DNA of 64,000 nucleotides from Fimbriosthenelais zetlandica (lineage: Eukaryota): NCBI GenBank assembly GCA_977030845.1, contig OZ365109.1, forward strand, positions 23,188,001 to 23,252,000, in the 5' to 3' direction. Below, piece by piece: positions 1,758 to 59,794 of this stretch. Numbering within the stretch: position 1 is the first letter of the stretch; each line of letters begins with the position of its first letter. Below the pieces are notes generated by a model. The model worked only from the letters and a program-made list of their open reading frames with translations, had not been told where the DNA came from and ran no database searches. The translations under genes were made by a program, and so were the position numbers.

Positions 1758-2043
1758 ATGGACCCTGTCTGCAAGAGACTGATCCAAACAACTACAGTAC
1801 TTATAGAGTTAACCCAATAGAGGATTGGGCAAGAGAACTTCATGAACCCATTCAGTCTGCAGGGGCGGGATCGGGGTGGCTACAGACTGGACCCAATACT
1901 CATTACTGGATCCAGTAACTGCATGTGATGCAGGAGATGAACCCAGGACTGGACCCAGCCTGCAGGGCCAGGGGACTGGAACCATCCTGCAGGAGACTGA
2001 ACCTAGCATGCATGGGACTTGACCCATTCTGCAGGGAACTGAG
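1758..2043 (+). repeat. Degenerate ~21-bp tandem repeat (GGACTGGACCCANNCTGCAGG), translating to 7-aa units GLDPACR/GLEPSCR/RLNLACM/GLDPFCR
   Basis: At least four recognisable units at 1948-2040, plus more diverged copies near 1758 and 1841. Confidence 0.65.
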
Positions 2044-3904: not shown

Positions 3905-4213
3905 ACTTCCGGTTAGACACCGGAACGTGCTGCCCTCCCGTATCGCGCGGAGGGCGGCAGAACCAAACTTTACTGCGAACTGACCGGAACGTGCTGCCCT
4001 CACCTACCCCTGCGGTGGATAGGGGAACTAAACTTTACTGCGGGCTGACCGGAACTTGCTGCCCTCTAGTACCGCGCGGAGGATAGCGGAACTAAAGTTA
4101 CTGAGGGCTGACCGCGACTGACCGTACAGGCGAGCACCCAGTAGACCTTTTCACGATAAATCCGGCGCATGCGCCCTACGTTGTTTACATTAACAACAGT
4201 TGTCAAAATGGCG
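3905..4213 (+). promoter_or_regulatory. CpG-rich promoter-like module: ETS-like ACTTCCGGT, CTCF-like TGCTGCCCTC repeats, palindrome GGCGCATGCGCC (NRF1-like), and AAAATGGCG (YY1-like) over the ATG
   Basis: Motifs seen at 3905-3913, in each repeat unit, at 4164-4175 and at 4205-4213. The factor assignments are by consensus similarity only. Confidence 0.5.
3919..4114 (+). repeat. Three diverged tandem repeats of 64, 65 and 63 bp (ACCGGAAC[G/T]TGCTGCCCTC...GAAC[C/T]AAA[C/G]TT...CTG)
   Basis: Units start at 3919, 3983 and 4048, with a partial fourth start at 4111. The flanks are conserved and the hairpin-forming middle is diverged. Confidence 0.88.
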
Positions 4214-13547: not shown

Positions 13548-13966
13548 CTGTAAAAACAAAAAAAGAGATCATGAATAATTATTTATTTTCCCAATTGTTT
13601 CAGGTGTGTTATCTTTCCATTCCTCATGGGAAGGAAATCAGACGAACGTCAGGTATTTAAATATTAGATGATGTTATTAATATGATTGACTTTATTTTTC
13701 TTCAATTGCACTGCCCGGCTTCGATTCATCCTTAAAATCCGATTACCCAAGATTGCAACAAATCTTATATCAAGATGCCCACCATTTCCAAAATCAATAG
13801 AATATTCCGATGTATCTTGTTTACATGGTCTTCAATTTTATCGCATCCCCATCCTTCTTCAACCAATCCAGGCAAAGCTGCATAATTGCATTACACTCAA
13901 ATGAATTTCCCGGGCTGGAATTAATATTAAGATTTCCAATGAGACATTTCAGATTAATGAACTCAC

Positions 13967-14356
13967 CAAAGAAGTAAATGAGGAACCTCTTCTCGCCATC
14001 GCTCTCGGCTCTCCGGGGAAGGTTCACCTCCACCGAGTTGCCCACTGTTGTGTAGACATGCCTTTCCTTGCCCTTGCCACCACATAGGACTTGTCCGACA
14101 CTGACTCCTTCCTCCTTGATGTTAGCATAAACCGGGCAGTTGCTCTCATGGCCACCCGATGTGTGGTGATTGATGTTTGAGGAGAAGTCTAGCAGATGCA
14201 GTTCGATTATCTGTCCCTTCTCGGCTTGAATACGCCAGGGGGATACTTCACTTCCACATCCGGTGGTTTCGGTGACTGTACTAGCGATGTAGCCCTCGCG
14301 AGCTTTGATCGGGAGTTTGCCTTTCGCCATGCATTTACGCCCCTCGGCACTTACAA
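13967..14356 (-). CDS. Exon encoding a CUB-like domain (EGYIASTVTETTGCGSEVSPWRIQAEKGQIIELHLLDF...LCGG...RFLIYF)
   Basis: Acceptor ttttgtcattgcag, donor TTG|GTGAGT, 390 nt, phase 1-1. The G-x-I-x-S, W-x-I-x-A-x-x-G-Q-x-I-x-L-x-x-x-D-F, CG and terminal F-x-I-x-F pattern is characteristic of CUB domains. Confidence 0.87.
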
Positions 14357-17300
14357 CTGCAATGACAAAAGTTTATGGAGGATGGTTAATTTATGGTTGC
14401 GTGCTTCTATCATGGATCAGATCTAATGTATCGGGCATATTGGTAATGGCAACAAAAACATCTTCAGGAATCTGCATGCGATGTGGTTTGCAGTTTTGTT
14501 GCTACCAATGTTTCCAGTCTATTTATGCATTCTTTTATATACACAAGCTATGGAAAAATGGCTTGACTCTGTTCTCTTCAGCTTTGCATGATAACAATAA
14601 CCTAGTATTTGTCTGCGAAAGGTTACATGTATATTCATTCAGAGCACAATGCAGGGGTGAATATCATGCTCTAACAATGGTAAATCAAGTGTCTACTCTT
14701 AGCAATATTTTTTCATGGATGCATAGTGTTTTTACGCAGGGCATACATATTTTAGGAGAAAGAACATAAACAAAATGCAGCGTATACGGTGTACAATGGA
14801 TCTGCTGAACCTTTTGAGTGGATGGTGTACTACAAGTACAGACAGTAGTGGGAGGGAGTGTTAAAGGATAGATGTAAATGGTGCTGTAATGCCATTAATT
14901 AAAGGCCCTGATCTCGATTATTATGAGGGAATAGATTTGAAGCCGTGCCCTGATCTAGATACCCATCGATCTGAATCTACTGACACTGTAGAGAGTGGTT
15001 TTAACCCTAGCACACACCCTGATGATGATGGGATTTACATTAGATGGGGGGCCAAGGGGAGGAGATAGATATATAAATTATCTTAGGCCAGACAAATGTA
15101 ATCAGGTTACGGGGAGGAAGGACGTCGGAACGCTTGGCGAGAGTTTGTTTTAAGAGATACTCCATCGCTCACATTACAAGGGTTTCATTTCCCCCAATGG
15201 CTCCTTAACCAGTTCTCGTGCCATTTCTTCCCTCCAGTAAGTACATGACCTGAAGGGTCAAGTTTCTTTTAATGCCTATTCAGGTTCCGCGGTACTGCGT
15301 ATGGACCGGCAGCCAAATGATAATAAAACGCAATGCAGTGAGTGTTATCTTTGCAGGGGTGTAATTATTTCACATCACACGACCATTGCAGGGAGCGAAC
15401 ACCACACTCTGATTGCCTTTCCCTTTAAAAGCGATCGCCGCCCCTTTTTATGTTGGACCTGCGCCAATGACCAGAAGTACAGGTGGCACTCGGAGCCTAC
15501 ATGATCTGTAATTAAGACGAGCGTTCGTTATTAGTGAGGTGTGCATCAGGACCTTTGTGGTTCTTCCGGAGAGGCGAGATTGGCACCATTACCTCCAGAT
15601 ATGGTGTCCTTTGTGCCACACTGGTTGCAGCATAAATAAGGTGAGGGAGTTCCGGCTGTCAGCGAAGCCTGATGGCTTCACCTCGCCATGATGCTGAGAT
15701 GACAAGTAAGAGAGCACCCTCTACTAATATCTGATTGGAGGGAGCTCCCTTCCTGCTGCCTCCCTTGTTTGCCTCATAGAGGGAGCCAACCAAAGGCTCA
15801 CATTGAGCCTCTGTAATTATGGACTTTTGCACTGGCTCTAGTGCCATCCTCCTCATTATCATTTCGAATTGAAAAGAATGATATGATCTGGTGATTCAAA
15901 AAAAGGCGTGAAGCCTTATATAAGCTTCATCATCAAGAAGAAAACATGCCTGCAGGACTTCTTTTTAATGAGATGTTATGTTTGTGATCAGATCTCATTT
16001 ACTGCAAATGCTGGTTTATTTGGAAAAGCCTCCACCACTACACCAGAAATAGTCCAGAGATTTCCATATAAACATTCTGCCTAGATTTGATTAGAAATGA
16101 GAAAAAAGAGACCAGTTATTCAAGCATAACTTTTCCATTTTGGGGCTTAACACGTGCTGATGGATTCAAAGTGTTGATTTTCTCCCTGTCCGTTGGAGAT
16201 TAGCGTGTTTCTGTTCTTAAATCCAGAGCTGCCTGTCGTTAAGCTCATTCGATTATAACGAGTTCTATATTTACACAATATTGCAATGCAGGGGAAACAC
16301 AGGGGCTTTGGGCCGCAAAACCCTTTGGCAGTTAATGCGCAAAGCGTAATTTTCATCCCACCTCTTTCACTTTCTCTAACCAAATAAATCACGCAAAAGC
16401 AATGCTTCTATGAATCCTGTAAGCTATATTGCCCTTGGCTAATGCATATTCATAGGACAAGCAACCACTATAATTCTGTCAACCATATTATTCAGCATCT
16501 TCTTTTTTCAGACCATGATGTTATTTTTTTTCTCGGTAAACATAAATCACTGACTGATCAGTCCCACCAATCACTGTCCATTATAGAGTATTCATTCCTC
16601 GGGTCATGGAGGGCAAAAGAAAGCTTTCAAAACACCAATTGCTATCTCCCTCAAAGAGTTTCGAGCACATACATTTAAAGCTAGCAGGGGGGTAAGAGTG
16701 TCTAGCAATAGAGAGGGGTGCAGAGGCCATCCATCTCTCTATGACAAGCTAGGTACAGCAAGTCATTTCTCTCTGCATGATCAAAGGCTAAAGAGCATTG
16801 CCTTTAACCCCAGTGCAGCCTTCTGGCTGTCGAGAATGATTCACATTCTGATGTTATGCACAGGTGACATATTTGATACATCCTTTGTGGCTGACAACCA
16901 TCAACAATAGATATTATAAATAATTCCGGATATCTAGCTTTGTCTCTACAGGTGCATCCCCCACTTGAATTTCACGATAATTTGGCATCGAAGGCAGGCC
17001 ATCATCGGCAGCAAAAGGGCACAAAGATTTAATGCAGCAGGGACGGTATCCGGCAAGCTTTTATGTATAGACCCTGAGTACTCCAGCGGATGTGGCTAAG
17101 GTTTATGGAGGAATCATCTCCTTATAAGATCTCTTCACCACCCACAATTCTGAAATGTGCAGGACAGAACCACCTGAGGGGTTCCCATGGGTAATGAGCG
17201 GCTGTCTGTTAGAGTGTAAAAGCATGACCGCGAGGATGTTTTCTGTTTGGCTGGCCAAGCGCCGTTCTCGACAAGAAAATCACAGTCTACTGATCAAGGG

Positions 17301-20300
17301 ATTCACTAGGATGCTGGCAGAACATCCATATTAGAGGAGCAAACCTATACATTGCCTGGCTTTTGAAAAAAAACATCTTGGGTATAGGAGAGAAGACATA
17401 CTTAACTCCCATGTTTTAACCCCCAGGGGTTTTGTTCGAATGTGAGCCTTTATATTGTAATGCATGTATCACATTTTATTCCCTTTACCAAAACCAGCTG
17501 CCATTTTGATGTGAATATCATCAGCCTCATCCATTACATGTGAATGTCTATATGAGCTATATGAATAATATGAGGCACATTCCTGTACACTTCAGCAACC
17601 TGAAAGGCAGTTTATATTCCAGTCAGCTCTGGTCAGACGGTACTAATAAATAATTGGATCAACAATGATAGCATATCAGCACAAGGTGGGTGACAGGCCA
17701 TAGACCTAGCTACCTTGGATGGAGCTTGGTTTTATCGTGCTCCACCACAGTATCCTGGCAATTGTTTATCAGCTCATTCAGTAATGAGGAAGACTCCACG
17801 TGAGGCCCCAGATCACGTTGGACCTCTGGCTTCTGGCTAGCCATTTAATTATCCTGTAGAGGGCCAACGACGTGCGTGGGTTATTTCAATCACAGAACAC
17901 AGCTCATTGCGAGAGAGTCCGACTCCAAAACCTCGATGTGATGAACCCATCCATTTCAAGGTTTGTACCTGGACATTAAATAAGCCAGGCAGGCTGGAGC
18001 CGCGGCTATAGATGTAGATAGAGGCCAGCCTTTCATATTAATCATATTTTTCCATCTCGTGAAAAATTGCCTCTGACCTCGGCCATCCACATGACCGAGC
18101 ATTAAAACAAGGGGTCTTCAGAAGCTAGTTGATACACAATAACTGAAGTCTGTGGAGGCATTGAAGTGGTGGTGTGTGCGGCTGAGAAACACATACGCCC
18201 AAGCAAAAAATGTATGAAAGTTATAGTCAAGGCTGGTCCTAATCTGGCTTACTTCGTGTGTATGATGCCTGATATCCTTGCTCCTCCAGGACAAGGACTG
18301 CCAAATGAAGTTGACCCCATGGCATGCACTATGGAGGACCCTTCAACCCTTGCCAGTAACCCCTGGTGCTAGGGGCCTTCTTCAATTAGGCGTGTCCACT
18401 CAGGTGAAGACGGAGCGTGATGTCTTAGCATTTGGCCTTTGAGACAGGGTCATCTTGCAGCTAGTGCAGCCCTAGCCAGTTTCCTCCAGGAGAGGCCTCT
18501 AGGGAGCACTATAACTCCTGGAGCTGAGCGATCACCCCCGGGCGCATCTCGGGGATTGGATCGGCCTGCCCTGAGGGTTAGGAAAACATATCTCAACGAA
18601 TCTCCTGATCTAATTCGCAGTGCTCATGGAAAACAAAGGCGACTGTCTTCCCATATTAAGCTGTGGATATCATATGGGCACGATTTGCGCCTCAAATAAC
18701 TACAATTACATTAATGAATTATGCCTTGCGCCGGGTAATGAATGTTTTTTGTTCAGGGTATGTGCTATAGATGGGTGATGAGGATCTCTAGGGACGGTTT
18801 CACCACTAGGGCTAACCTCCATGTATGGTCCTTATTCAATTCCTGTATGGCCCTTACACTGGGTATGCCCTGCCAATAGACGAAGACAGAACAATGGGTA
18901 ACGCTCGTTAGATAGGACCCATTCGGTGTTTCTAGCGTGACCAATGGAATTTCACATACATGTGTGGGCTCATATTTAGGTCATGTTGATGGTTCTTAAT
19001 GAAATAAAAGCAAAAGAACGCCTCGGGAGCTATATGATCCAAACTAAGCACATTAGACACTCACACATCCGTGCTGCTGCTGCGACAACAGACCCCTCTG
19101 AAAGCCCGGCTATATAACAGGGTCAAGTGAGTGACATTTTGGGGTCATGCTGTCATATTTATAGTGCTATCCTCCCTCTGGCTAGGTCAGAGTTGACTGT
19201 AATGAGAAATATCCACCTTTTCCTCTGACGTTACTCATATTTTCTCATTTACCTTGGATCAATGTCACAGTAGCTGCAAGAAGAAGATCATTAATTCATG
19301 TGAAGGGAGGACCTTATAGTCTCATCACTTTCATAATCCACTAAAAGTTATGCCCTTCCACTCTTTTGTGTGTTCTCTGCACTTGGTAGATCTACATCTG
19401 TATTGAACTCTTACATAATTGATACTTTTCTGGTAAATACCAAGCTATAGCCACTTGTAAAACCTATACATGACATTTATCCAATAATGTTTTGTATAAT
19501 ATGTTTTACTTGTTACAGAGAGACACAGAGCCAATGTCCTTTTGAAAGTGCAGCTCATTATGTTTTTGTATTTCTATGGTCTTCTGCATTGAATCGATCC
19601 ATGCCTCTATCTACTTTTTGAAAGAAGAATCCTCACATTTTCATGTGGCTTTCAAGAAAGTCTCTTTACTTAGCAGTGCATCGATACCATTTAAGCAATG
19701 ACAGGTGCACATGCTAAAAGTCAGGAAGGTGCTTCCTTGTTGTTTTTGGTCGCCATTTTAATCGATAGACTCCCAGCCCTCTATGCAGATGCCTTTAAAG
19801 TCTAACCGGCCTGCATCCGTGTACAAAGCTTAAGTTTTGCATAATGAATCTCAACCATAAGGTGCATCGATCCGCTGTTTAGCTAGCTGCCTAACTGCAT
19901 TTTGTACATTATCTGCAGGTATAACTCCTATCCTTAAACAGACCAGTATCAGATTTCTTTCTAGCCAGTGTTGTAAGGGACCGTTCATCAGATAATGTTC
20001 CCCTGACAGAAATAGTAGTATTAGGTACAGAACTGTTCAACTGGAAGTCCCTCACTATAGTGCCCTATTCAGGTAGCAGCCCCAGCCATGAAATTGAGCT
20101 CACTGCAGCAGACCTACATATTATATGAAAGCAGAAAGCTGGACATCGCCATATGTGATATCTTAGCGTTGGATCTTGCAACTCAAAGAGGCCATTGGAC
20201 TTTCATACCTAAGTAATTATGAGAGACTAACCACATGGGCGAAATAACCACATCTTGTCTGCCAAACTTCAAAGCTGGCACGAATGAAGAAAGCCCGTGT

Positions 20301-21195
20301 AGGCAGTCTTATGTGACAGGGCACATCAAGGAAGGCAAGACCTGTAAACATGCTTTTCCCAGCTCCATCCCCCGCTAAAAGCCTGATATGAAAGGTCATC
20401 AGGCACAGTCAGTAAGAAACAGTGTTTCCTCTCCTTCAAATGCCCCTCTCCTGTGATCCTATAATTTCCAATGAATTGTCTTCCCTTGTCAGGATGGTTA
20501 TATTCTCTCTAGGAACCCATGTTCTTTGAACAGCTCACACTTTCTCTTCCCCTTTTGTGATATTGAATCAGGTCAAGGGTCTTTTACATATTTATCATTT
20601 TCTCTGTTCTCCAGCCACAGCCATGAACGCTCGATATTTCTCCTCAGACTGCTATAAAAACGTCCAACTGCATTGGGCAGATTTTATGGAAAGGCAATCT
20701 AGGCGAAGGAAGCCTGCAAGGCCTATCTGAGCCTGGCGCCAAGCAAGGGGCACAGCTTTGCCAGAGCGGCTCTACAAGGGTCAAATGTTACTCTGCCCCC
20801 TATTGTATTATGAAATAGTGTCCGTTAGGGACTCGGAGAATCCTAAGCTCTCTGATCCTCCAACTGTAGCAATGTGAATTATCATAGAAACCTTATCATG
20901 TTGCAACAGATCATCACGTTTTGACTTATACTCTAGCAACTGCCTCCTTTAGATTTGCTTTTGTATAATTGGCTCCCTCAAAATCCGGTGGAAAATACAG
21001 CTGTGGTGAATGTTATCAAAGTTTGCCCTTCCTATACACCAATTTGGGTTCTGGATATGGAGGTTAGGGAATTGGGTAGTGTAACGTAGGGTCTCTACAC
21101 TCTAAAGTACCAGGGTAATTGATATAGGCCCTTTACAAACATGCAGAACAGGACCAGGAAATAAAGGTGACCTTAGAAGTAACCTCGGTACTCAC

Positions 21196-21480
21196 CTTTG
21201 ACACACCTATAACTAGCTTCCAAATAGGACTTGAGGTCCTCCAAACACGGCTGCAATTTATCAAGCTCCGGATCAGGGATTTGGAATTCACACTGGCTCT
21301 TTCCTGAGCACCTTGAATCGACGAGGTCGAGTACGTCAGTAAAGCAGCCGACGTAGCCAAGGTCGTTCTTCACACACCTTCCAAGGCGCATGCGTCCATA
21401 ACGTGCCGTTTCCATGACAATGACTTCATCCGGTTTGCATGACGCCTTGAAGGATTCCCAAGGACAATACTCCCGAAGGG
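21196..21480 (-). CDS. Exon encoding a SUEL/galactose(rhamnose)-binding lectin-like domain (LREYCPWESFKASC...ARYGRMRLGRC...CSGKSQC...QPCLEDLKSYLEASYRCVK)
   Basis: Polypyrimidine+CAG acceptor (tctcttctacttgcag) and AAG|GTGAGT donor. The exon is 285 nt, open and phase 1-1. It carries the YGR motif, Cys spacing and 'YLxxxYxC' ending typical of the SUEL/Gal_lectin fold. Confidence 0.88.
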
Positions 21481-23774
21481 CTGCAAGTAGAAGAGAGATA
21501 AAGGGTTAGGTTCAGTCACTGTCACCTTTCCATCAATATAGATAATGATACGAAACTAACTGCCGCAGGAGTAGAAGGAAACCTATTATCACAATTACAA
21601 TCTGCTTCATAGTGCTTCCCTCTCTATAGCTGGAGGCGAGGGAATAGTCAGTCACTTTACAATTGACGTGAGGATCATTGTCTTGGCTCCATGCAATGCT
21701 TCGATTTTGAAGGATTCTTGCCTTGCACCAATGATACAGTTAGGAACAGGACCTTTCTTGGGAGACCAAAGAATGTCTCCTTCTATACAATACCTTATCA
21801 GTACGAGCTGAACGACGCCGTGAATGGAGTCTCGAAACGCTAGAAGGGGAAATGATTTATGGGCTAGATGACGTTGACTTCATGGGTAATTCTGACATTT
21901 TGCATGCTTGCCTTGGCGCTTACTGGCTCGCCATGGCCCCGAGCCGTTCCTAACAGCATCTGGGTCCAGAATTAATTTAGAATAATGCAATTATCATGCA
22001 TCAATGGTCACCTTCTCTGCTCCTGCCTTGATATGGGATAATATCAATATTTGCCATAGATCAAACACCCAAACTTCAGTCCAGCTTGACCTGGAGGTTC
22101 CCAGTAAAACTAGTTATTGTCCACCACATTTTCGCTCTTTCTATTGTTACCACTATTTTACTCTGCCAGGTTTGAAAATCATTATTCCTTTACTACACAA
22201 GTAGAGGAAGAGAGCGTTTGTGATCGGTCACCTTCAGCTGGAGGCCGAGGGTCAGTCATGCCCGTCTGCCCACGACTCCCCCTTCGTCATATTCTAAGCT
22301 CCGCGCATCTCAGACCATCCCGCAATGTAATTGGCCAGAAAATGTAGCCACGTGATTAATTTTTGTCTGCTCTGCTAGAGTGCAAAGGCACATAAATCTA
22401 CTGGGTGATCCAGCTAGGCAAAAGCCCTTTATCTCATGCAAGTTGGTGATGACCTTCTGCCCTAGATGAGCTACCGACAGAGGAAATCCAAGACTGGCAG
22501 AATAATGTTTTTTTGGCTGGTCTGGCATGTCGTTGCCAATATAAGGTGGAATTAAACCTAATGGATGGCAGTAAGTTGGGCATAAGTGCAGTGCTCTCTC
22601 TGAAGGAAAAAGACACTCTCAGATAAAGAAGACTCCTAAGAGCATTCCCGAATTAAGGAATACATAAAAAAGAGCCTTAATGCAGTAGATTACATTTGAT
22701 TAGAAAATTCCTGTTATTATATGGGCGTACATTCTTAAAGAAAACAACAGGTAACAGTTGTTTTTAAATGAGCAAATGGAGTTGTACTTCAGCAGAGGTA
22801 AAGAGACCTTGAGTGGTGTGAGTCTTTCAAAAAAGAAGCATTTGCCATCACGCAGATGGGGAAAATGAAGAGGCTTTGTAACACACCCAAAGGGTTGTCA
22901 AATTCAAGCCCATCGATTGACGGTTTTGTCTCCAGTATTTCAAAGGGATCTCGCTTGTTAGGACTTTGTGAAATAATGTTTGAGGCAATATGCTGAATAT
23001 CATGCTGCCCAACTTGAATTCCAGTACCTTTCATGTACGTGTACTGGTGAAAGGGCCATTAAAAACAATGCACATCTCCAGATGGCATTAACTGCCATGG
23101 GCACATTTTTTATATCCGTAGTTGCACGAGCACCGGGTGCGATATGTGTCATATCATTTCCTATGTATCTGTAATATGACAGGATAGACTGTATAACTAG
23201 TTTCAAAATATACTATGATGGAGGAGGATTTTCATCACCTTCCCCTTGGTCATATGTCAGCGTAAAGGTCAGGAAAATAAATTCTCTAAGATGCCCTCCA
23301 AAATAGTGGAATATATACAGGAAGGAAGGACAAGGAACCGGGTAATTTATCTGGCAAAATATCACATCTTATCTGGAAGTTTCCAGCCATTGTTTATGAG
23401 CCGCTCAGGGAGTTCAAGCTAGAGCAACTCCGGGTGGAGTTGGGGAAGGGTTTAGCTGAGGACTGGGCTATAAAGCTGAGTTAATCGTCTATATATTGGG
23501 AGGTGAGCATTATACGGCAGGGGGTGATGGAAAGGGCGAGGATTTCATCAAGTTCCCAACATTACTTTGGGTCGTGGGACTTGATCTGAGATCTGAGGGG
23601 AACCTTCTGATGTCACCTATCCAATATGGCCGCATTATTGCCTTGGAGCCTTACGCCTGGCACATGTCCTCGTAATAGGAGTTGATGGTCACCTCCCGCT
23701 GAAAAAAGTAGCACCGTTTGCGCGCGTAGTGATTTAGCATTTGCCTGGTACGAAGGCAGAGCGGAAGGACTTAC

Positions 23775-24028: not shown

Positions 24029-24679
24029 TCCCTTGGTACACTGCGAGTCTCAACTGCCTTGCGGCTGTTCCCATATAGTATTTAGATCTGACTTTAGATA
24101 GGCGATTTTTATCTCACACAATACTGATTAATACGCCTCCATGAACAATATCAAAGTGTGAGGGAAGGCTGTGGACTGTAACGTGCCAATAGTGTTCACA
24201 CTTTGTACGTGATTAAACAGATCACAAATCAAATACACCATCTCCAGCACGCGCCTCGCCAGACAGTTACAATAGAGAAGCTTTCCCTTCCCGTTTTTCC
24301 CTGCGTCTGCGAGCATCCCAGGATTTTTTTCCATTCCGGAAGAAAACATGCATATATATCGAAGCACACGTGATTAATTTAACACCCAATGGCACAGAGA
24401 CAAATGGATGCTTGATAAAACAAAGTAGACCCATATGTGTCAGAGGAAAACACAGAGCTGTATCGCGTAAAAATAAAACAATGTAGAGTGTGTGTAAAAA
24501 AACACCCATGAAAACATTAGCATTTAAAGTAAAAGAAATATTGGCAACCCAGATATGGGGCGCCAAGTGTTACCTTTTATATTTCGTACTTCAATTATTT
24601 ATTTCGATACGAAATATTTTTTATTTTGTACCACAATTATTTAATTTTGTTTCAATTTATTTTATTTCGTCTGGAATTA

Positions 24680-25161
24680 AAATTCCGTGGACGGAATTTT
24701 AATTAATTTTAATTTCCGTGGAAGTAATTAATATTCCGTGGACGGAATTTTAATGAATTTTAATTCCGTGGAAGGAATTAATATTCCGTGGACGGAATTA
24801 AACTTGATTAAAATTCCGTCCACGGAATATTAATTCCTTCCACGGAATTAAAATTAATTAAAATTCCGTCCACAGAATTTTAATTCTGTAGACGGAATTA
24901 AAATTTCGTTGACGGAATTAATTAATTCCGTCCACAGAATTTTAATTCTGTAGACAGAATTAAAATTTCGTTGACGGAATTAATTAATTACGTCCACAGA
25001 ATTTTAATTGTGTAGACAGAATTAAAATTTCGTTGACGGAATTAATTAATTCCGTCCACAGAATTTTAATTGTGTAGACAGAATTAAAATTTCGTTGACG
25101 GAATTAATTTATTCCGTCCACAGAATTAAAATTTCGTTGACAGAATTAATTAATTCCGTCT
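24680..25161. repeat. Left-arm array of ~21 palindromic subunits AATTCCGT-NN-ACGGAATT, with a 62-bp three-subunit higher-order repeat
   Basis: Read directly from the sequence. The higher-order unit aattccgtccacagaattttaattctgtagacagaattaaaatttcgttgacggaattaatt recurs ~4 times with variants. Confidence 0.9.
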
Positions 25162-25730
25162 ATTTCCTTCAACCAACATAAGGTGGCAGCACGTTCAGGG
25201 ATTGTAAAACCTATAGAAACGAAGTTGTTGTCAGAGTTGATCTGCTGTCGCCATGAGTCCTGCAACATCAAGACAACTAATAACGTTGTGTTGTCATAGC
25301 TCCCCCAGTATTGCCATGAGTTCCCCTACGTCACCACCTTTGCCCCGCCCAAGAAAAGCACTCTCACCAATGATCAGTATCACATAATAAAAGTTGGTCC
25401 ATTTAGAGCATATGCTAAGTCCCATTGGTAGATCCGATGACTATAATAAATAGCTTAAAAATAAGAAATAAAAGCGCCAGTAGCCCTGTCGGCGATCAGC
25501 ATGTCATAGCGGACACATGGCGGGAACCTGACGTCAGTGCTTGGGAGCGGCGCTTTGGTAACGGTGACCCCGTGACATCATAACTGGGTCATGATCGCGC
25601 ATGCGCAGTGGTAATTATTCACATTGGTCGCTAGGCTAGGAGTGAACCACTGTCACCTGAATCAAGTAGGCCCTAGGCCTAACAGGTTTTTGAAGAGAGA
25701 GTGCTGCCACCTTATGGTGGTTGAAGGAAA

Positions 25731-26302
25731 TAGACGGAATTAATTAATTCCGTCAACGAAATTTTAATTCCATCTACAGAATTGAAATTCTGTGGACGGA
25801 ATTAATTAATTCCGTCAACGAAATTTTAATTTTGTCTACAGAATTAAAATTCTGTGGACGGAATTAATTAATTCCGTCAACGAAATTTTAATTTTGTCTA
25901 CAGAATTAAAATTCTGTGGACGGAATTAATTAATTCCGTCAACGAAATTTTAATTCTGTGGACGGAATTAATTAATTCCGTCAACGAAATTTTAATTCCG
26001 TCTACAGAATTAAAATTCTGTGGACGGAATTTTAATTAATTTTAATTCCGTGGACGGAATTTTAATTAATTTTAATTCCGTGGACGGAATTTTAATTAAT
26101 TTTAATTCCGTGGAAGGAATTAATATTCCGTGGACGGAATTTTAATTAATTTTAATTCCGTCCACGGAATATTAATTCCTTCCACGGAATATTAATTAAT
26201 TAAAATTCCGTCCACGGAATATTAATTCCTTCCATGGAATTAAAATTAATTAAAATTCCGTCCACGGAATTAAAATTAATTAAAATTCCGTCCACGGAAT
26301 TT
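25731..26302. repeat. Right-arm array of ~24 palindromic subunits, mirror image of the left array
   Basis: Same subunits and the same 62-bp higher-order unit in reverse-complement orientation. Confidence 0.9.
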
Positions 26303-29300
26303 TAATTGTGGTACAAAATAAAAAATATTTCGTATCGAAATAAATAATTGAAGTACGAAATATAAAAGGTAACACTTGGCGCCCCATACCCAGAAGGCAT
26401 GTTTATGTTACTTTGATGTCTACCATCTATATGGACATCAGGCCATGTTTGTGGTAAGCAGCCTTAAATCAGAAGATCGATTATTTCGCACTGTCACTTC
26501 CTCGTGCTATAGTTCCTATCGCACCAGCAGCGCCACTTTTTTGTATACATATTGACAAATGAGGACTTATTGCACATATGGGATTCAACTTGGCCTGAAC
26601 ACATGCATAGCCAAAGGCAAATAAGAGGGAGCCCATTGATTTCCTTTGTACAGTTTCAATCCCTGTTTTGGCCAGCCGTGCCCAGGAGTAGGATTCCTTT
26701 TCAGAGAATTGCAGAGGGTCATTGACGGGGTCGGGTGTCTAAATGATCAGGTGGATCTCCCTTGAGACGTCAGTTCCAATCATTGGCAGCAGAATTGAAT
26801 TATTTGCCTTAAAGTGATAGGAGGGTGTGAAGCAACGACGTTACCTATAGGGAACGAATAAATAAACATGGAGACATTCAAGCAAGCGGCAAGTAAATGG
26901 CCTTTTTAAATTGCCTTGTATTGTTAAGGCGGCTGGAGATGCCAGTAGTGGTTAAGTTTGTGTTGTCCTAAATGATTGCGAAAGTTTCAGATCCAACTAA
27001 CGAAGGCTAGTGCAAATAACCCTTTTGGTGAAAGCATAAAAATATTGTCTGCTGGAGTGCAGCGTGAGTGTTCAGCATTCGTTGTAACTTATTCCCAATC
27101 GTATTTACCCAAGATACTTATCCACAGATAGCTCGGGAAATAGGGCCTGTCATCACTGTTTTGTGTTACGTTGAGGCAGTGAGAGGGGGGTATAAAAAGT
27201 CACCGTCACATTGACATCAAATGTAAGGTAAAAAGTTAATCAGTAAAATCTCATGCTTCTGATATGCCGAGAGCAGGTTATCTCGGCAATAAATTTTCCT
27301 CGGATATTCATTATGGGCAACACGCGTCATCAATTTCTCGTTTCCTCCTGGGCCAGGCCGTTTCAATGAATCAAAGCATATTCTTAGAATAAATGAAGAG
27401 GAAAGTGGGCGTGAGTTATTCCTGCTTCACAATGACAAACAGTATGAACTGAGTACATTCGCTACAGTCGGTATATTACCCGCGTACAATTATCCAGACT
27501 ATTCCTTATCTGCTTTTAATGGAAAAGGAAATAGAAGAAAATATTTATAGGACCGCATGATCCCCATGTACTCAGAAGGGAGGCTTGCATTCGCTTCCCA
27601 AATACCATATTCATAGCTAAGTTGACCAAATTGATAATAGTAGGACATCAAATCATAAAACTGGCTGGAACCCCTATTCCCCTCCCAGCCACAAATATTG
27701 ATTTACTCCTACAGTAATGGGGTTGGCTCGCCACAAGGAATGACATCTCCGATGATCTAGATTTAATCTTTATGGAGTTAATCTTAACTATATCAGACGC
27801 TGAGTGGCATAGTGATTATGATCTATCCTGGATCCTTCATACAAGGAGTAGTGCTTTCCTCCCACTGAAACTAGATAGCCTGGCTATTTCATAGCAGATA
27901 AGAGCAATAATTCCAATGTTTATTTATAAAGCCTCATTAACTCTGATGCTACGTTGATCCTACTTTCCTCCTGGACTTGTGTGTAATCAGAGAAAACAAA
28001 ACAACAGTGCTAGTTTATGTATACAAAAAAGGTGTTCCATCCAAACAAGACCGGGCATATAAAAAGATTATGTTGGTTTTCCTGTTCTAGCGTGCTCAAT
28101 TCACACAGGAAGTGTGACTGGTTTAGAGGCCCAACTATTGCAGATTTCCCCAGGTAATAGAACCGAAATGAACTCTTAGGATCTGCCCCTGGCATGTCCA
28201 AATTCAGAGGGCATCCCCACTATTGGCTTCAGTCGAGGGGAGCCTCATTTCAATGCACGTGAACCTTCTGAAGGCCATTATAGCATACATTTACTTTCCA
28301 CAGGTCCCTGCAAGCCACTTGCGCTCGCTGGCTTGTAACCATCCCTGGATAACCAATTTTGGTAATGCTGCATCAATTTTCACGGGTCAGGAGCTTACCC
28401 CGCCATGCCCAGCCCTGGCATGGGTTGAAGCTTTTCTCCAACCTGTCACCTCGATTTAAGGAGTATCAAAGACTGTTCACTTGTCCTTGGTCGAAAATAA
28501 AGACTCGGTCCTTCCTACCGTGAAATCAAGTTATTGGACACAATCTAAATATATTAGAGTCATGCTCTGGGTCATTACTCATCTCTGTCCTTGCAAGCAT
28601 GTGAATGTTATATTATCATGGCTAGTTGGAATCTGAGAATCCTTTCTAAAGTAAGAACCAGCCAGTGGCGGTTCAGTCTGCGAAAGTCCCCCAAGGTATA
28701 TATGGAGAACTGGGAAGCCGGGTGGGGGAGGTAGTCGACGCCTAGCCCACTCACACTGGCTTCCCTCCCTGCTCACGATAACGTCAGGCAATGGTTGAAA
28801 CCCACGCAAGTTTCTCTCCAACCTTGCCTGACCAGTCAACATTGCTGGACTATTTTGTCCACTGGATTAATTCTCAATCTAGATTAAGGCGAGCATAAGA
28901 GGATTAGGCATGTTGGATGAAGGGAGGAAGCCAGGGCTTAATGTAAAGAGCTCCTTGGCCCACTAATTAGCTACCACATTGTTCTGCTCGGTCAGAGAAC
29001 TTCATATTTGGGATGCCGTTAGGGCCCTGCTCTGGCGTTGGGAGAGTGCGAAGGTGCGGAAAATCAGTACTTCTACTTCAGTCCCCTAGACAGAGATCTC
29101 CCATTTTGTCGGATCAGGTGCTTTTATTTTCAGCCCTGTCTAACATGAGAGGAAGAGAATTGATGAAAGGGCCATCTGCTCAGAATACAAAATACAGTAT
29201 GGGATGGGATGTATCCATGAGGGATCGTGGCCCATCCAACTAATGGGGCAGAGGTGGCAAGCCTAAAATCCTGGCAAACTACTGCTTAGCGCTTACCAGA

Positions 29301-32300: not shown

Positions 32301-34120
32301 CTGGCATGGCTTGTTGGATGTGGCATTATAAGGATGAAGCTTATTTGTGTGTCCTTATATCCATGGATGCTTTCCCAATTACTTCCTGCCCTTCATACCA
32401 TCATCTGACACCGAGACCACATCAGGAAATTAGTAATCTAAACAGAAATAGATATTATGACAATGGCGAAGGAAAAAAAGGAACGAGTGGCAACTCTGAA
32501 ACCATGTAGGCTACACGTGTGGGTTTCTAATTACTAAGAGATCATGCATATCAGTGACTGTAAAGAAAATGATAAATATTAATTTGAATGTCGCTGCTAC
32601 AAACAAGTTGCAACTCTGAAGAAGTACTTAGCGAAGTCATCAAAGTTGGTTGAACTGGGAATTAATTAGAGACTCTAATCAGGACGCCTGTAGGAAAGAT
32701 AATGACGGAGATGATGTATGTCTTCATCAAGGAGGATGTATTTTATGTGTCATATTATATCTCACTCGGTGTGATCAACGATAAAGCCTCGTGGACTAAT
32801 TGAATCTCTAAATCAGGGGACCTATCTCTCTGTATTATATGAAACATGTACCAAGACGACGTAACATTATTAGCTAGCATATCAATGATAATTGCCATTG
32901 TAAACCGATTTCCATCATCACTATGTATACTATACCTGTTTTATTACCAATAATCTAGCGAGTTACCTAAAAAAATTATCTCAAGAGTTACGACTAAGAG
33001 GACTCTTTCCATTAATAAAGTATCCAAGTGGCAACTCGGGGTTTTTAAGTCTTGAGCCATTTCAAAGGTTTCAGTCATGTGGAAAAGGATCCCGCTATGC
33101 CAGGAGGCACCGACGACAGCATGATTAAAGTAACTGAACTAGATAAGCTGGGAACAATAGATTCAGGGCTATTAATAATATATAATTCATAGCTTAAATA
33201 AAACTGTCGAGCAATTAGATTTCCTCAATAGCAACCGGCGTGAAAGGCCTGCTGCTTTTGTGCTGAAAGCCCTAGAGGGGAGAGCCATCGAGTCTAAGTA
33301 GCGCACTTTAATACTGAAATGGATATTTGTAGCCGACAGCTTTCCATTTTCCTTAGAGCTCATGTAGGTCCTCTTTCAATCTTCATTTCGCACTAAAGCG
33401 AAAGGTAAATATGGACAAAACAATAAAATCTAATGTCGAGTTAATGTTTTTATTGGTGCAATGCAAGTGTGACTGGCTTTTTTTGTCATGGGATGGGGAT
33501 TGCTTCCGGGGGGCTATGTATAGCAATGGGTGGGGATGTAAGTGGAGCATATCAGTTTCATGATAACATCGGGCGTGTGTTGAGATGATTACTTAATGGT
33601 CTCATTAGTATTTACAAAACATTACTCAGTGACAGGCAAACGTCACTCCATGCATTTCACCTGCTGTGGGCTGTCACATGCAATAGTCACATTTGAGTCA
33701 GTAAAGGGATATTTAGCTTTATGTGTTGACTCTTTCAGCACTGAGCCCATGATAATTTGGGCCCCTGATGGCCGCATCACAGGATGGGCAGGTAAGCAGA
33801 AAAGTGCTTTATTATGTTTTATGGAGACCGAGGAAAAGTGCATTTGGATGTTAGAGAGTCCAAACCCAGCAGGGGTAAGTGGATGAATGTCATTGTTCCC
33901 AGCCCATTACCCCGCAAAATACACCCCCAGATTAAATCGTCAAATGCTCCTGGAAGGTGGCTAGCTGCAGACGTATGCCCCTGAGGCATAGACTTGTACA
34001 CCCCAGCGAATCTCAATTGGCAAAGATTTGTAGGCGGGATGATAATATGACAATATTCACTCCATTTACATTGCCAGAGGGGACTGCATCATGTGGGTGT
34101 TCTATTCTCATTCAACCAGG

Positions 34121-34122
<2 letters not shown>

Positions 34123-34178
<56 letters not shown>
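34123..34178. repeat. (TC)28 microsatellite
   Basis: Uninterrupted TC dinucleotide run. Confidence 0.97.
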
Positions 34179-34184
<6 letters not shown>

Positions 34185-37100
34185 TCTCCCTCTATCAACA
34201 ACAAGTCACTGCTTAGACATTCCAATCATGAAATGTTAAGGGTGTTAGAGTGTCAGAAAAACACAACCATTAATAAAATGAATCATCCCACCATCATGAT
34301 TGCCCAATGACAAAACAATCAAATTGAGTTATTGAAATGAAACAGACATGGTCATCACTTTGAAACAGGCACTGGTGCACGACAAAAGATCTGCGATTAT
34401 TTTTCACCTCGCTCAATAATACATTAAATTTCTACATCAATCATATCTGTTTTCCGAAAGGCAGAAAGCGTTTGACGTTGAAAACCTGAGCTTGCGCTCC
34501 AGTTCGATTCACCATGAGGAAAATGTCACTAAGCAGAATAAAAACTGCCTTGTATATTGTATTGATGCATGGTTAATGTGTATAAACTCAGGCATCATGT
34601 TGTATGATTGGGTTCCTCAGGCACCTCCCAAGCTGTCATCATTATCTTTATAAGGAGCTGAAAACATAAGACTGGCATCTATAGGTGCTCAGGCATGCAA
34701 GCGGCAATACCGTAGCCATGAAGAATGCCTCAGGCAGTGGAGCCCTAACCACAAGTATCAATCATTTTATTCTAATTAATGGATTGCCTTTTAAGGCTTC
34801 TGGCATCGGTAGGTCATTCCTGAGGGGCTGATCTATACAATGTCATGTTCGTACCAGCAGCATGAGCAATCCCTTTATATTTAGCTTATAGGCATCAATA
34901 ACGTAGGAGGTTCAAGCTATCATCACTCCTCATGTTGATCCAATGGCAAATAAGGTTAAGTGGAAATTGACTAGATGCGATCACTGATCCCTGTGGATAG
35001 TTATTGCCGTCGTCTTCACACATAAACCATCCGACTCCCGTGAGGGTTATTGGCAAACCAAATTCGCAAATCTAAGCAGGGCATGGCTTGCCAAGACAGA
35101 GACGTAAAGACTGGTCCAAAATAATCAACAAATATTTGGGTCAACGGGGAATGGGAAGACACCCATGAGAAGTGCTTTGGGACACAAGGACCGGGTCCTT
35201 CTGACAATAATGCTGAGCTTGGGCTCTATATATATGGGCAGGACACCACTTTACGGGCACGTAGTGGTCAATTGTGGTGGAGACGGATCCATTCTGAGTC
35301 TGATCCCTATCATTTTACAAACATGCCAGCCTCGCCTGCCTCCAAAGAAGACCCGGCGCCGGGATGGATCTGACTGGAAGTTCACCCTCGGAATGAGATG
35401 GGTTGGATTAGTAGGGGAAACCTAAGAGTGTGGGGGCTGGAGGAGCTTGTCCTCCTCCAGTGCAGCGCCCGTGATGAACCTTCCAGTGTGGCGCGTGTTC
35501 TCACCCCCACGAACGTCCCTCGGGACGAGCGGCTTCTGATTTGCAGGCAGTGGTCCGAAAAACCACAGCTATCTCAGCACAAATTGCGTCTGTCTATGTG
35601 ATATCGAGCAGGCAGACTGCTTGGTTTGTCAGCCAGCCTAGGCAAGAATAGCAATATCCACAAACCGATTTCACTGGCTGGCTCGAAAATGGAATGGAGA
35701 AATCGGATGCTGTTGAGGAGAGGGAGGCAATAGAAACCTGGCTAAGTTCTGCCTTCAGCCTAGCAGTTCTGCATCCATGAGCCCTTAGAGTTAGTGTCAT
35801 TTTCCAAGTGCGATCAGTTCAGAAGATGTCTCATGTATACCGTCCCAATGGGTGGTACTGAATCGTCTCAAAGTCATATATGAGGATTTGGGGCTATACT
35901 ATATGATTGCACTTGAAGGGAGCATATAATCAATGCAGAAGCTGAAAAATGCCGAGCTAGTTCACCACAGTAAAGGAACCTGTTTAGAAGTGAGGGATGT
36001 ACTTAGAACCGAGTTTTATGGACGAAGTCATGCCATTTAAAAGTTTCTAAATCCGGGTAAATAACATGAAATAGGATCAGAGAAGCTATTCTAAATGATC
36101 GCCATGGGACAGTGATCTGCGGGTCAGGAGCTTTTATCATAACTGTTTATCTGTAAACTTATCGATGTTGTGGGGGAGAAATAATTACAGCCAGGAGCCC
36201 CTGCGCAGGGATCATTAGTCGGTTGTGTGATAACGTTACTTCATTACTCCAAGTCAGGTCCCAATAATCGCATGTGGACTCGCTAAATCACTGGACCGCT
36301 AATCCGCTCTGGCCACCGGTGGTTATGTTTTGATGGATTCGCCCTGGTCCCTGTTGAATCACGTTCCTTGCACGGGACCATTTCTATGAACTTGATTCGC
36401 CCACATTCATGCCTGTCAGAATCTAGTCACGCCAAAATGTCTGAAGCTGACTAATATTTGACATGAATAGTGCAAATGTTCTGTCATCTTGAGGGGAAAG
36501 AAGTATTCATGGGACTAATGCTAGACATTCTCAGGCAAAGCACTGAATGGTCCAGGGCCCAGTTTCTTTTTTCGATGAGCACTAACTATGAATCAATCAC
36601 TTGGAAATGAGCACTTTTAAACAGAAGCATGTGAAAAGTCTAAATATGCTAGCTTTAGCAGTGAGCATGAACATGAACATCCATGCAGACCTTTCACTAT
36701 TGTCGTCATTATTTATACTAGCAAAACGCTGGTTTCATTGGCCTTTATGGCTTGTGCATGAGCTAGTGCTTAGAACTGGGCTATAGAGGCTTGCAGTCTC
36801 ATATTAACAATGGCAAGGCAGGGATGAATTTAGCATCTGCCTTTGTGCAAATGCCCTGCATCTTGCAATTTCCTTTTGTTCCAAAGACCTGATAAGAGAT
36901 GTAATAGAAGGGACAATCCCGGACTGGGATCAGACATGCAGTCACCAAACGAGTTTCCATTCTGGCAGGGAGATTACATGTTCCCGATCATATGATATGC
37001 TTGTCAGATCCAAGCACTGCCTAGAAGTTGGCTTCCTGTTCCAGAAGTGCTGATTATTACACATCACGGGTCACTCTGATCCTGCAGCGAATCAAGCAGG

Positions 37101-59614: not shown

Positions 59615-59794
59615 TGGAAACGATCCGTTGTCAAAGGGTAGTTGGGAGTGTGTAGTATATGGAAATGGTCCATTGTCAAAGGGTAGCAGGGAGTGTGTAG
59701 TATATGGAAATGGTCCATTGTCAAAGGCTCGATGGGAGTGTGTAGTATATGGAAATGGTGCATTGTTAAAGGCTAGATGGGAGTATGTAGTATA
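59615..59794. repeat. 45-bp minisatellite, ~4 copies (TCCATTGTCAAAGGGTAGCAGGGAGTGTGTAGTATATGGAAATGG)
   Basis: Units start at 59624, 59669, 59714 and 59759, with few substitutions. Confidence 0.93.

What the first reader, a model, noticed from the sequence alone, without database searches (positions are those of the whole stretch)
24548..26394. Young foldback transposon with a 6-bp target duplication and TATGGGG termini that fit no common superfamily signature
The outer 86 bp of each end are perfectly reverse-complementary, and CCCAGA is repeated immediately outside both ends. Known foldback elements differ: Drosophila FB (Mutator-related) has ~9-bp TSDs, Galileo (P superfamily) 7 bp, and sea-urchin TU 8 bp. 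Among TIR elements, 6-bp TSDs are characteristic of Polintons/Mavericks, which start with AG, not TA. Two alternative readings exist: a 7-bp ACCCAGA TSD with a 1-nt terminal asymmetry, or a TA TSD that leaves the CCCAGA repeat unexplained. The element may report an uncharacterised transposase family.
Basis: partly seen in the sequence, partly recalled or inferred. Interest (0 to 1): 0.78.

Follow-up and report, generated by a model that had tools for sequence, protein, structure and literature searches.

The report
Foldback transposon with IS3EU/GingerRoot end signature
This is a real, recently inserted 1.8-kb hairpin-shaped DNA transposon with no gene of its own, but its 6-bp target duplication and TA…TA (TATGG…CCATA) ends match the published signature of the IS3EU/GingerRoot superfamily, so it is probably an unusual-looking member of a known group.

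Summary
Window 24554-26388 (1835 bp) has perfectly complementary outer 86-bp ends, and CCCAGA directly flanks both ends. Arms of about 640 and 690 bp consist of 20/30/50/62-bp tandem units and enclose a unique 508-bp centre with no ORF over 52 aa.

A collinear contig from a related species (about 80% nt identity) lacks the element: 486 bp there against 2301 bp here. It is therefore a lineage-specific insertion.

The interpretation "fits no common superfamily" does not hold. Published descriptions give IS3EU/GingerRoot exactly this signature:
- TSDs are usually 6 bp.
- Termini are always or mostly TA..TA.
- Fungal IS3EU families end TAYGG..CCRTA.
- TIRs run from over 30 bp to 100-150 bp.
- The superfamily occurs in fish, corals, anemones and oysters.

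Dada, Polinton, Ginger2, hAT6, Galileo/P, MULE foldbacks and Tc1/mariner each fail at least one tested feature.

The assignment rests on one copy. No transposase and no second copy could be reached: none in the window, and the terminal 20-mer has no match in the metagenome, viral and prokaryote-genome collections. The foldback architecture is unusual, and I found no paper describing it for IS3EU.

Verdict: a non-autonomous foldback-shaped element, most likely IS3EU/GingerRoot (about 0.6). Interest is modest.

The parts
24548..24553 (.). Left copy of the target-site duplication, CCCAGA
   Evidence: Read directly; identical to 26389-26394; chance match about 2.9e-4 from the base composition.
24554..26388 (.). 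Whole element, 1835 bp, ends TATGG...CCATA, non-autonomous (no ORF over 52 aa inside)
   Evidence: Absent at the orthologous site of L003/L004.
24554..24639 (.). Left terminal inverted repeat, 86 nt, GC 0.28
   Evidence: 100% complementary to 26303-26388 (I19).
24640..25192 (.). Left arm interior: tandem arrays with periods of 50 bp (24673-24905) and 62 bp (24852-25160), built of roughly 20-bp units each holding a short palindrome
   Evidence: TRF; 15 of the 35 loose core motifs lie in this arm; GC 0.30.
25193..25700 (.). Unique centre, 508 bp, GC 0.47, 20 CpG. No ORF over 52 aa and no similarity elsewhere. Holds the short palindromes TGACGTCA (25529-25536) and GCGCATGCGC (25597-25606).
25701..26302 (.). 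Right arm interior: tandem arrays with periods of 62 bp (25733-26021) and 30/50/80 bp (26014-26324)
   Evidence: (20 of the 35 loose core motifs); pairs with the left arm.
26303..26388 (.). Right terminal inverted repeat, 86 nt
   Evidence: I19.
26389..26394 (.). Right copy of the target-site duplication, CCCAGA
21176..21505 (-). Neighbour, not part of the element: exon-like open frame with a SUEL/rhamnose-binding lectin domain, about 3 kb from the element. The element lies on the 5' side of this exon with respect to the gene's strand.
   Evidence: Pfam SUEL_Lectin 7.2e-10; PDB rhamnose-binding lectin 1.9e-9; 96% identical ORF in the relative (P0006).

Best explanation
The element is a non-autonomous cut-and-paste DNA transposon with foldback architecture, most likely a member of the IS3EU/GingerRoot superfamily.

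Shown here:
- A 1835-bp insertion is bounded by perfect 86-bp inverted ends that begin TA and end TA.
- It is flanked by a 6-bp direct duplication of the target.
- It is absent from the orthologous site of a related species.
- It has no coding capacity.

Inferred:
- It was moved in trans by an integrase-like DDD/E transposase encoded by an autonomous IS3EU/GingerRoot element elsewhere in the genome.
- That enzyme recognises the terminal repeats and joins the two 3' ends to target phosphates staggered by 6 bp. Repair of the gaps produces the CCCAGA duplication.
- The roughly 35 short palindromic units that fill the arms may be extra transposase-binding sites, as shown for the long TIRs of Galileo. 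Alternatively they are a satellite-like expansion that rides along. The evidence does not decide between these.
- The GC-richer 508-bp centre is either a remnant of the parent element's interior or a captured fragment.
For: Anatomy and TSD.

Insertion status: L003 2282-2768 (486 bp) corresponds to window 26538-24237 (2301 bp). The difference equals the element plus one TSD to within about 26 bp.

No coding capacity. The Pfam scan of all 117 open frames of at least 75 aa in the window found only a lectin domain.

Superfamily signature from papers read with the tools:
[quoted passage not shown] - In GingerRoot, 72 of 77 intact elements are TA...TA. TSDs are mostly 6 bp (5 of 7 bp, 1 of 8 bp), TIRs are 100-150 bp, and TSDs are GC-rich (61%). 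[quoted passage not shown]
- Fungal IS3EU generate 6-bp TSDs, have TIRs longer than 30 bp and "end with TAYGG..CCRTA" (PMC12730594). This element ends TATGG..CCATA.
- New insertions of the IS3EU-related Styx element carry 6-bp TSDs (PMC10853768).

The TSD here is 4/6 G+C.

Two oyster satellite DNAs are annotated as IS3EU-related, so tandem repeats inside IS3EU elements have precedent (PMC8268682).

Galileo's long TIRs hold multiple binding sites for its transposase's THAP domain (PMC3688188, title). This is the analogy for the arm units.
Against: - The assignment rests on a single copy, and only on TSD length plus five terminal bases. No transposase was seen.
- No second copy could be found. 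There is none in the window or in the fetched loci.
- The terminal 20-mer has no match in the metagenome, viral and prokaryotic-genome collections.
- ORFs inside the element are not on record elsewhere, and a word search with the TIR-encoded frame found nothing.
- The TAYGG rule comes from fungal families. I could not read the termini of animal IS3EU families, because the GingerRoot supplement is not held.
- Foldback architecture has not been described for IS3EU in the library searched. The one paper holding both words uses them in unrelated contexts.
- A 7-bp reading of the TSD cannot be excluded from one copy, although 7 bp also occurs in GingerRoot.
Confidence: 0.6

Rival explanations
1. 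The element belongs to a cut-and-paste transposase family not yet described. Its resemblance to the IS3EU end signature would then be coincidental.
For: No transposase could be tied to the element. The foldback form is not reported for IS3EU. There are no relatives in any collection searched.
Against: The combination of a 6-bp TSD, TA..TA ends and TAYGG..CCRTA is exactly what a known superfamily shows, so a new family is not required. The collections searched hold little animal DNA, so the absence of relatives says little.
Confidence: 0.12
2. It is a non-autonomous hAT element of the hAT6 group, which makes 6-bp TSDs.
For: hAT families with 6-bp TSDs exist and sit within animal hAT lineages (PMC12730594).
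Against: The hAT terminal motif is YARNG (PMC3014272). TATGG has T where a purine is required at position 3. Long arms filled with internal repeats are not a reported feature of hAT in the papers read.
Confidence: 0.08
3. It is a Mutator-related foldback element, like Drosophila FB or nematode Tm1, with an atypically short TSD.
For: Foldback architecture with tandem units in the arms. A metagenome contig (L014) carries a MULE transposase between inverted arms that hold the same 14-nt palindromic core.
Against: No 9-nt duplication is present: CAACCCAGA on the left against CCCAGAAGG on the right. L014 was selected by that very motif among 241 million records. It shares no other similarity, with no blastn hit. 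Most of the other pattern matches lie on contigs of much higher G+C with no array like this one.
Confidence: 0.07
4. It is a P-superfamily foldback element (Galileo-like) with a 7-bp TSD, ACCCAGA, and ends offset by one base.
For: ACCCAGA is present at 24547-24553 and 26388-26394. Galileo has long, internally repetitive TIRs and 7-bp TSDs (PMC4168063).
Against: The 7-bp reading breaks the otherwise perfect register of the 86-bp ends. The extra A is expected by chance about 0.3 of the time. Galileo TSDs follow the palindromic preference GTANTAC, which ACCCAGA does not. Galileo is described only within Drosophila.
Confidence: 0.05
5. It is a Tc1/mariner-type or other element with a TA duplication, and the CCCAGA repeat is a coincidence or a pre-existing repeat of the target.
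For: TA sits at both ends next to the flanks.
Against: The CCCAGA repeat would need a chance event of about 2.9e-4 (composition). CCCAGA does not occur on either strand in the 550 bp of L003/L004 around the orthologous site.
Confidence: 0.02
6. It is not a mobile element but a local palindromic satellite or inverted duplication.
For: The arms are satellite-like arrays.
Against: It has sharp boundaries with an exact flanking duplication. It is absent from the collinear site in the relative. The unit motif occurs 35 times inside the element and 0 times elsewhere in 62 kb.
Confidence: 0.02

Closest known systems
IS3EU / GingerRoot superfamily of DNA transposons (Repbase IS3EU; GingerRoot of Selaginella, corals, fish, oysters)
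   Same: 6-bp TSD; 5'-TA...TA-3' termini; first five bases fit TAYGG..CCRTA; TIRs of tens to about 150 bp; G+C-rich TSD; non-autonomous families are common (28 of 45 Repbase families). Sources.
   Different: Described members are 4-13 kb autonomous or gene-fragment-carrying elements with simple TIRs. Here 72% of an 1835-bp element is two 640-690-bp arms made of tandem palindromic units. The transposase link is untested.
Galileo (P superfamily) of Drosophila
   Same: Foldback-like long TIRs with internal tandem repeats. Copies consisting only of two TIRs and a spacer exist. Terminal segments are more constrained than the rest.
   Different: Its TSD is 7 (rarely 8) bp with a GTANTAC preference. 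It uses a THAP/P transposase and is restricted to Drosophila.
Drosophila FB, Tetris and nematode Tm1 (Mutator-related foldback elements)
   Same: Arms made of short tandem units, little or no coding sequence, and hairpin potential (titles and abstracts).
   Different: No 9-bp duplication is present at these ends. No MULE protein is associated with this element.
Polinton/Maverick
   Same: 6-bp TSD and TIRs.
   Different: Termini are AG...TC, not TA...TA. Polintons encode their own DNA polymerase and integrase, and I know them to be large and multi-gene, whereas this element has no gene.
Dada
   Same: 6-7-bp TSD.
   Different: Dada has no TIRs and inserts inside U6, U1 or tRNA genes. Here there are 86-bp perfect TIRs and no tRNA or Rfam family at or near the site.

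Membership tests
IS3EU/GingerRoot | TSD usually 6 bp (occasionally 7-8) | tested here: met
   CCCAGA on both sides. One copy only. Rule from PMC10045372 and PMC6839031.
IS3EU/GingerRoot | Termini 5'-TA...TA-3' | tested here: met
   The element starts TA (24554-24555) and ends TA (26387-26388). Rule.
IS3EU/GingerRoot | Extended terminal motif TAYGG..CCRTA (reported for fungal IS3EU) | tested here: met
   TATGG...CCATA. Rule from PMC12730594. Not known to me for animal families.
IS3EU/GingerRoot | Terminal inverted repeats (over 30 bp; 100-150 bp in GingerRoot) | tested here: met
   86 nt perfect, continuing imperfectly to about 640 nt.
IS3EU/GingerRoot | Mobilised by an integrase-like DDD/E transposase of this superfamily | not testable with these tools
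   No ORF over 52 aa in the element. No transposase domain in any open frame of at least 75 aa in the window. No other copy reachable.
IS3EU/GingerRoot | Repbase rule for non-autonomous elements: same TSD length and terminal positions 1-11 matching a classified family (at most 1 mismatch) | not testable with these tools
   Rule quoted in PMC4455052. Repbase and Dfam are not available here.
Polinton/Maverick | Termini AG...TC with a 6-bp TSD | tested here: not met
   The TSD length fits, but the termini are TA...TA. Rule.
Dada | No TIRs; insertion within multicopy small RNA genes | tested here: not met
   86-nt perfect TIRs. No tRNA and no Rfam family in the window. Rule.
hAT (hAT6 group) | Terminal motif YARNG | tested here: not met
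   TATGG has T at position 3. Motif from PMC3014272. The 6-bp TSD itself fits hAT6.
Ginger2/TDD | Termini TG...CA with a 4-6-bp TSD | tested here: not met
   The second base is A, not G. Rule.
Galileo / P superfamily | 7-8-bp TSD with palindromic preference GTANTAC | tested here: not met
   The only 7-nt reading is ACCCAGA, and it offsets the ends by one base. Rule.
Mutator-related foldback elements (FB, Tm1) | TSD of about 9 bp | tested here: not met
The 9 nt outside the two ends differ.
Foldback elements as a structural class | Long inverted arms made of tandem subrepeats, forming most of the element, with a short non-repetitive spacer | tested here: met
Tc1/mariner | TA target duplication only | tested here: inconclusive
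   TA is present at both ends, but this reading leaves the exact CCCAGA flank repeat to chance (about 2.9e-4).

The most novel reading that the evidence does not exclude
The element is mobilised by a transposase lineage that has not been described, or by a known one (for example MULE-like) working with an atypical 6-bp stagger. In that case the match to the IS3EU end signature is convergence. A milder version is more likely and is not counted here: this is the first foldback-architecture family within IS3EU/GingerRoot.
Probability: 0.12. Interest if true: 0.6.

Novelty: new member of a known kind. Interest (0 to 1): 0.3.

Why it matters
If the assignment is right, the integrase-related IS3EU/GingerRoot superfamily also produces foldback-shaped, satellite-filled non-autonomous derivatives. 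That form has so far been associated with Mutator-like and P-like transposases. Foldback architecture would then be a recurrent outcome of TIR evolution rather than a family trait.

Such an element could also seed satellite DNA and ectopic recombination in this genome, as Tetris and Galileo do in Drosophila. For annotation there is a practical point: a 6-bp TSD with TA..TA ends should be checked against IS3EU before a new superfamily is proposed.

The insertion lies about 3 kb from a lectin-domain exon. Its centre is CpG- and palindrome-rich, so a local regulatory effect is conceivable but untested.

Tried and rejected
**Search for further copies**
- blastn of the element against the rest of the window gave no hits.
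- The terminal 21-mer with up to 3 mismatches matched only the two ends.
- The terminal 20-mer had 0 matches in JGI metagenome contigs, IMG/VR and GTDB genome contigs.
- Motif searches and blastn against the fetched loci gave 0 hits.

**Paired-core pattern in metagenome contigs**
- It returned 22 loci.
- None resembles the element by blastn.
- Most lie on contigs of much higher G+C and none has an array like the element's.
- Two (L013, L014) belong to a small MULE. I treat this as a coincidence of a short palindrome selected by the query.

**Other copies through called proteins**
- Exact look-ups of the 35-aa ORF that starts at base 2 of the TIR, and of the 52-aa central ORF, found nothing on record.
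- A word search with the TIR-encoded frame found no candidate.

**Coding content**
- The Pfam scan of 117 open frames of at least 75 aa found only SUEL_Lectin.
- I did not scan shorter frames.

**Organism**
- The accessions of related assemblies (GCA_022702875.1, GCA_022702835.1, SRR13427716, ERR14368249) appear in no paper of the library.
- The source species therefore stays unidentified.
- It is a eukaryote, probably an animal: 0.41 GC, CpG o/e 0.58, exons separated by kilobases.
- I do not take it for human. The lectin exon's best solved-structure relatives are rhamnose-binding lectins, with only weak matches to latrophilins.

**Exact empty-site sequence**
- At about 80% identity the 30 nt around the site do not align base for base between the window and L003/L004.
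- The relative shows that the element is absent. It cannot fix the TSD length.

**Not used or not done**
- The GingerRoot supplement with coral termini is not held.
- I did not use the large representative-protein search or structure prediction, because there is no protein to submit.
The two exons were searched apart.
Full report
**1. The observation**

The sequence at 24400-26550 shows the left flank ending ...GGCAACCCAGA. The element then starts TATGGGGCGCC at 24554 and ends GGCGCCCCATA at 26388, followed by CCCAGAAGGC.
- The repeat finder lists arms 24554-24639 and 26303-26388 as 86 nt and 100% complementary (I19). My own count of the perfect terminal IR is also 86.
- CCCAGA occupies 24548-24553 and 26389-26394.
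- The terminal 21-mer occurs nowhere else in the window, with 0.00 expected from shuffles.
- From the window's base composition, an exact 6-nt flank match has a chance of about 2.9e-4.
- A scan of all 64 kb for TA..TA ends with at least 16/20 TIR identity and an exact 6-nt flank repeat found this element and pairs within its own arrays only. Five shuffles gave none.

**2. Anatomy**

The arms:
- Beyond the 86-nt ends, the arms continue to about 25192 on the left and from about 25701 on the right.
- They align over 611 nt at 96% identity and differ by insertions and deletions of up to 42 nt, several of them the size of one or two repeat units.
- TRF reports periods of 20, 30, 50 and 62 bp. I used only its coordinates and periods.
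- The basic unit is about 20 bp and holds a 14-nt palindrome, as it stands for example at 26046-26059.
- The strict pattern used occurs 11 times and a looser one 35 times inside the element. Both occur 0 times in the other 62 kb.
- The arms are 0.28-0.30 GC.

The centre and the fold:
- The centre, 25193-25700, is unique, 0.47 GC and has 20 CpG.
- No ORF in the element exceeds 52 aa.
- Folded as single-stranded DNA, the element gives -706.8 kcal/mol against -164.4 +/- 7.5 for shuffles, with 573 arm-to-arm pairs. "Foldback" is therefore a fair structural label.

How the arms differ:
- The 25 arm-to-arm mismatches include only 9 transitions, 3 of them at CpG. By eye, several are GG versus CC at the centre of a unit.
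- At the mismatch rate of the inner arms, 0 mismatches in the terminal 86 nt has P = 0.015.
- The differences between the arms therefore look like features of the family's structure rather than decay since insertion. The ends look constrained.

**3. It is an insertion**

The window is eukaryotic and probably from an animal. It has no N, 0.41 GC, CpG o/e 0.58, and no tRNA or Rfam match. I do not take it for human.

Two exon-like frames on the minus strand served as anchors, and I searched them apart without joining them:
- 21176-21505 has a SUEL-lectin domain.
- 13824-14372 has an 89% identical ORF in a relative.

Word searches with these frames led to Logan contigs L003 and L004 (ERR14368249, ERR14368248). 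These are collinear with the window at about 75-84% nucleotide identity through non-coding DNA.
- L003 1839-2282 matches window 26990-26538, and L003 2768-2798 matches window 24237-24207.
- The interval is 486 bp in the relative and 2301 bp in the window. That is the element plus one TSD (1841 bp), to within 26 bp.
- Local alignments of each flank separately meet at L003 2441-2448 with nothing in between.

The relative has an empty site. At this divergence the 30 nt around the site do not align base for base, so the relative cannot fix the TSD length.

**4. What it is**

The literature held here says otherwise.
[quoted passage not shown] - Cerbin et al. report the following for GingerRoot: 72 of 77 intact elements with TA...TA; TSDs mostly 6 bp (five of 7 bp, one of 8 bp); TIRs of 100-150 bp; G+C-rich TSDs; presence in fish, corals, sea anemones and oyster (PMC6839031).
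- New insertions of the IS3EU-related Styx element carry 6-bp TSDs (PMC10853768).

The element here ends TATGG...CCATA, has a 6-bp TSD with 4/6 G+C, and has 86-nt perfect TIRs. Every feature of the signature that can be read from one copy is met.

**5. Alternatives tested**

- **Dada** makes 6-7-bp TSDs but has no TIRs and sits in U6, U1 or tRNA genes. It is not met.
- **Polinton** has 6-bp TSDs but AG...TC ends. Not met.
- **Ginger2/TDD** ends TG...CA. Not met.
- **hAT6** makes 6-bp TSDs, but the hAT terminal motif is YARNG and position 3 here is T. Weakened, not excluded.
- **Galileo** has foldback-like TIRs but 7-bp TSDs with a GTANTAC preference. The 7-nt reading here (ACCCAGA) does not fit that preference and offsets the ends.
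- **A 9-nt duplication**, as in Mutator-type foldbacks, is absent.
- **A bare TA duplication** leaves the CCCAGA repeat to a chance of about 2.9e-4. CCCAGA is absent from the 550 bp of the relative around the orthologous site.

**6. What could not be tested**

The defining feature of any superfamily is its transposase, and none is available.
- The element encodes nothing. The window holds no transposase domain in frames of at least 75 aa.
- No other copy was reachable in any collection. These collections hold little animal DNA, so the absence of hits is uninformative.
- A search for pairs of the arm palindrome in metagenomes gave 22 loci, none similar to the element by blastn.
- Two of those loci belong to a 3-kb element with a MULE transposase between inverted arms carrying the same 14-nt core. 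The query selected for that core, so I treat this as weak. I list a MULE-type origin as a rival at low weight.

**7. Mechanism**

Shown: the insertion, the TSD, the TIRs, the lack of coding capacity and the hairpin potential.

Inferred:
- Trans-mobilisation by an integrase-like DDD/E transposase that cuts the target with a 6-bp stagger. This follows retroviral integrases and their relatives, which produce 4-6-bp duplications (discussion in PMC10045372).
- The repeated palindromic units may act as additional binding sites, by analogy with the multiple THAP-binding sites in Galileo's long TIRs (PMC3688188). Alternatively they are a passenger satellite. IS3EU-related satellites are reported in oyster (PMC8268682).

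**8. Verdict**

The most likely reading (0.6) is a non-autonomous, foldback-shaped member of IS3EU/GingerRoot, that is, a new member of a known kind. Its architecture is one I found no report of for that superfamily. Interest is 0.3. The most novel reading not excluded is an undescribed or atypical transposase, with probability about 0.12.

Noticed in passing
L014 1-3005 (JGI contig Ga0180215_1034123); L013 is a fragment of the same kind: A small AT-rich (0.30 GC) element. A 359-aa ORF at 1252-2331(-) has a MULE transposase domain (1.3e-8). It lies between inverted arms of at least 175 bp (123-298 / 2831-3005) that carry TTCCGT-NN-ACGGAA palindromes. The right arm runs off the contig, so ends and TSD are unknown.
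   Followed up: partly
window 21176-21505 (-) and 13824-14372 (-): Two exon-like frames of one minus-strand gene. The first has a SUEL/rhamnose-binding lectin domain (Pfam 7.2e-10; PDB 5h4s 1.9e-9). The second is conserved (89% aa) in the relative but has no family or PDB match. Homologues of the lectin exon at 50-60% identity are frequent in JGI and ENA metagenome assemblies.
   Followed up: partly
window 25193-25700: The centre of the element is much richer in G+C (0.47) than the arms (0.30) and has 20 CpG. It contains the palindromes TGACGTCA (25529-25536) and GCGCATGCGC (25597-25606). It could be a promoter-like remnant or a captured fragment. It has no similarity to anything else fetched.
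   Followed up: partly
window 59567-59791: A tandem repeat of four to five 45-bp units in an AT-rich stretch.
   Followed up: no
window 3947-4073: Two adjacent 62-nt direct repeats at 79% identity. The overlapping open frame shows a repeated peptide.
   Followed up: no
window 33936-34307 (+): The open frame holds a run of alternating Ser-Leu, i.e. a CT/AG dinucleotide microsatellite.
   Followed up: no
L006 16450-17805 (-) and 18567-20528 (+): In a more distant relative (ENA ERZ25767047, 1.96-Mb contig), a reverse-transcriptase ORF (RVT_1) and a BTB-Kelch gene lie a few kb from the lectin homologue. A long TA microsatellite lies at about 6240-6490 and 19640-19810.
   Followed up: no
L017, L022, L025, L027 (JGI metagenome contigs): These contigs (0.44-0.48 GC) share a repeated block, GATTCCGTCCACGGAAGGCCGGAT, in 2-4 tandem copies next to CTTCGA repeats. 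It is unrelated to the element.
   Followed up: no
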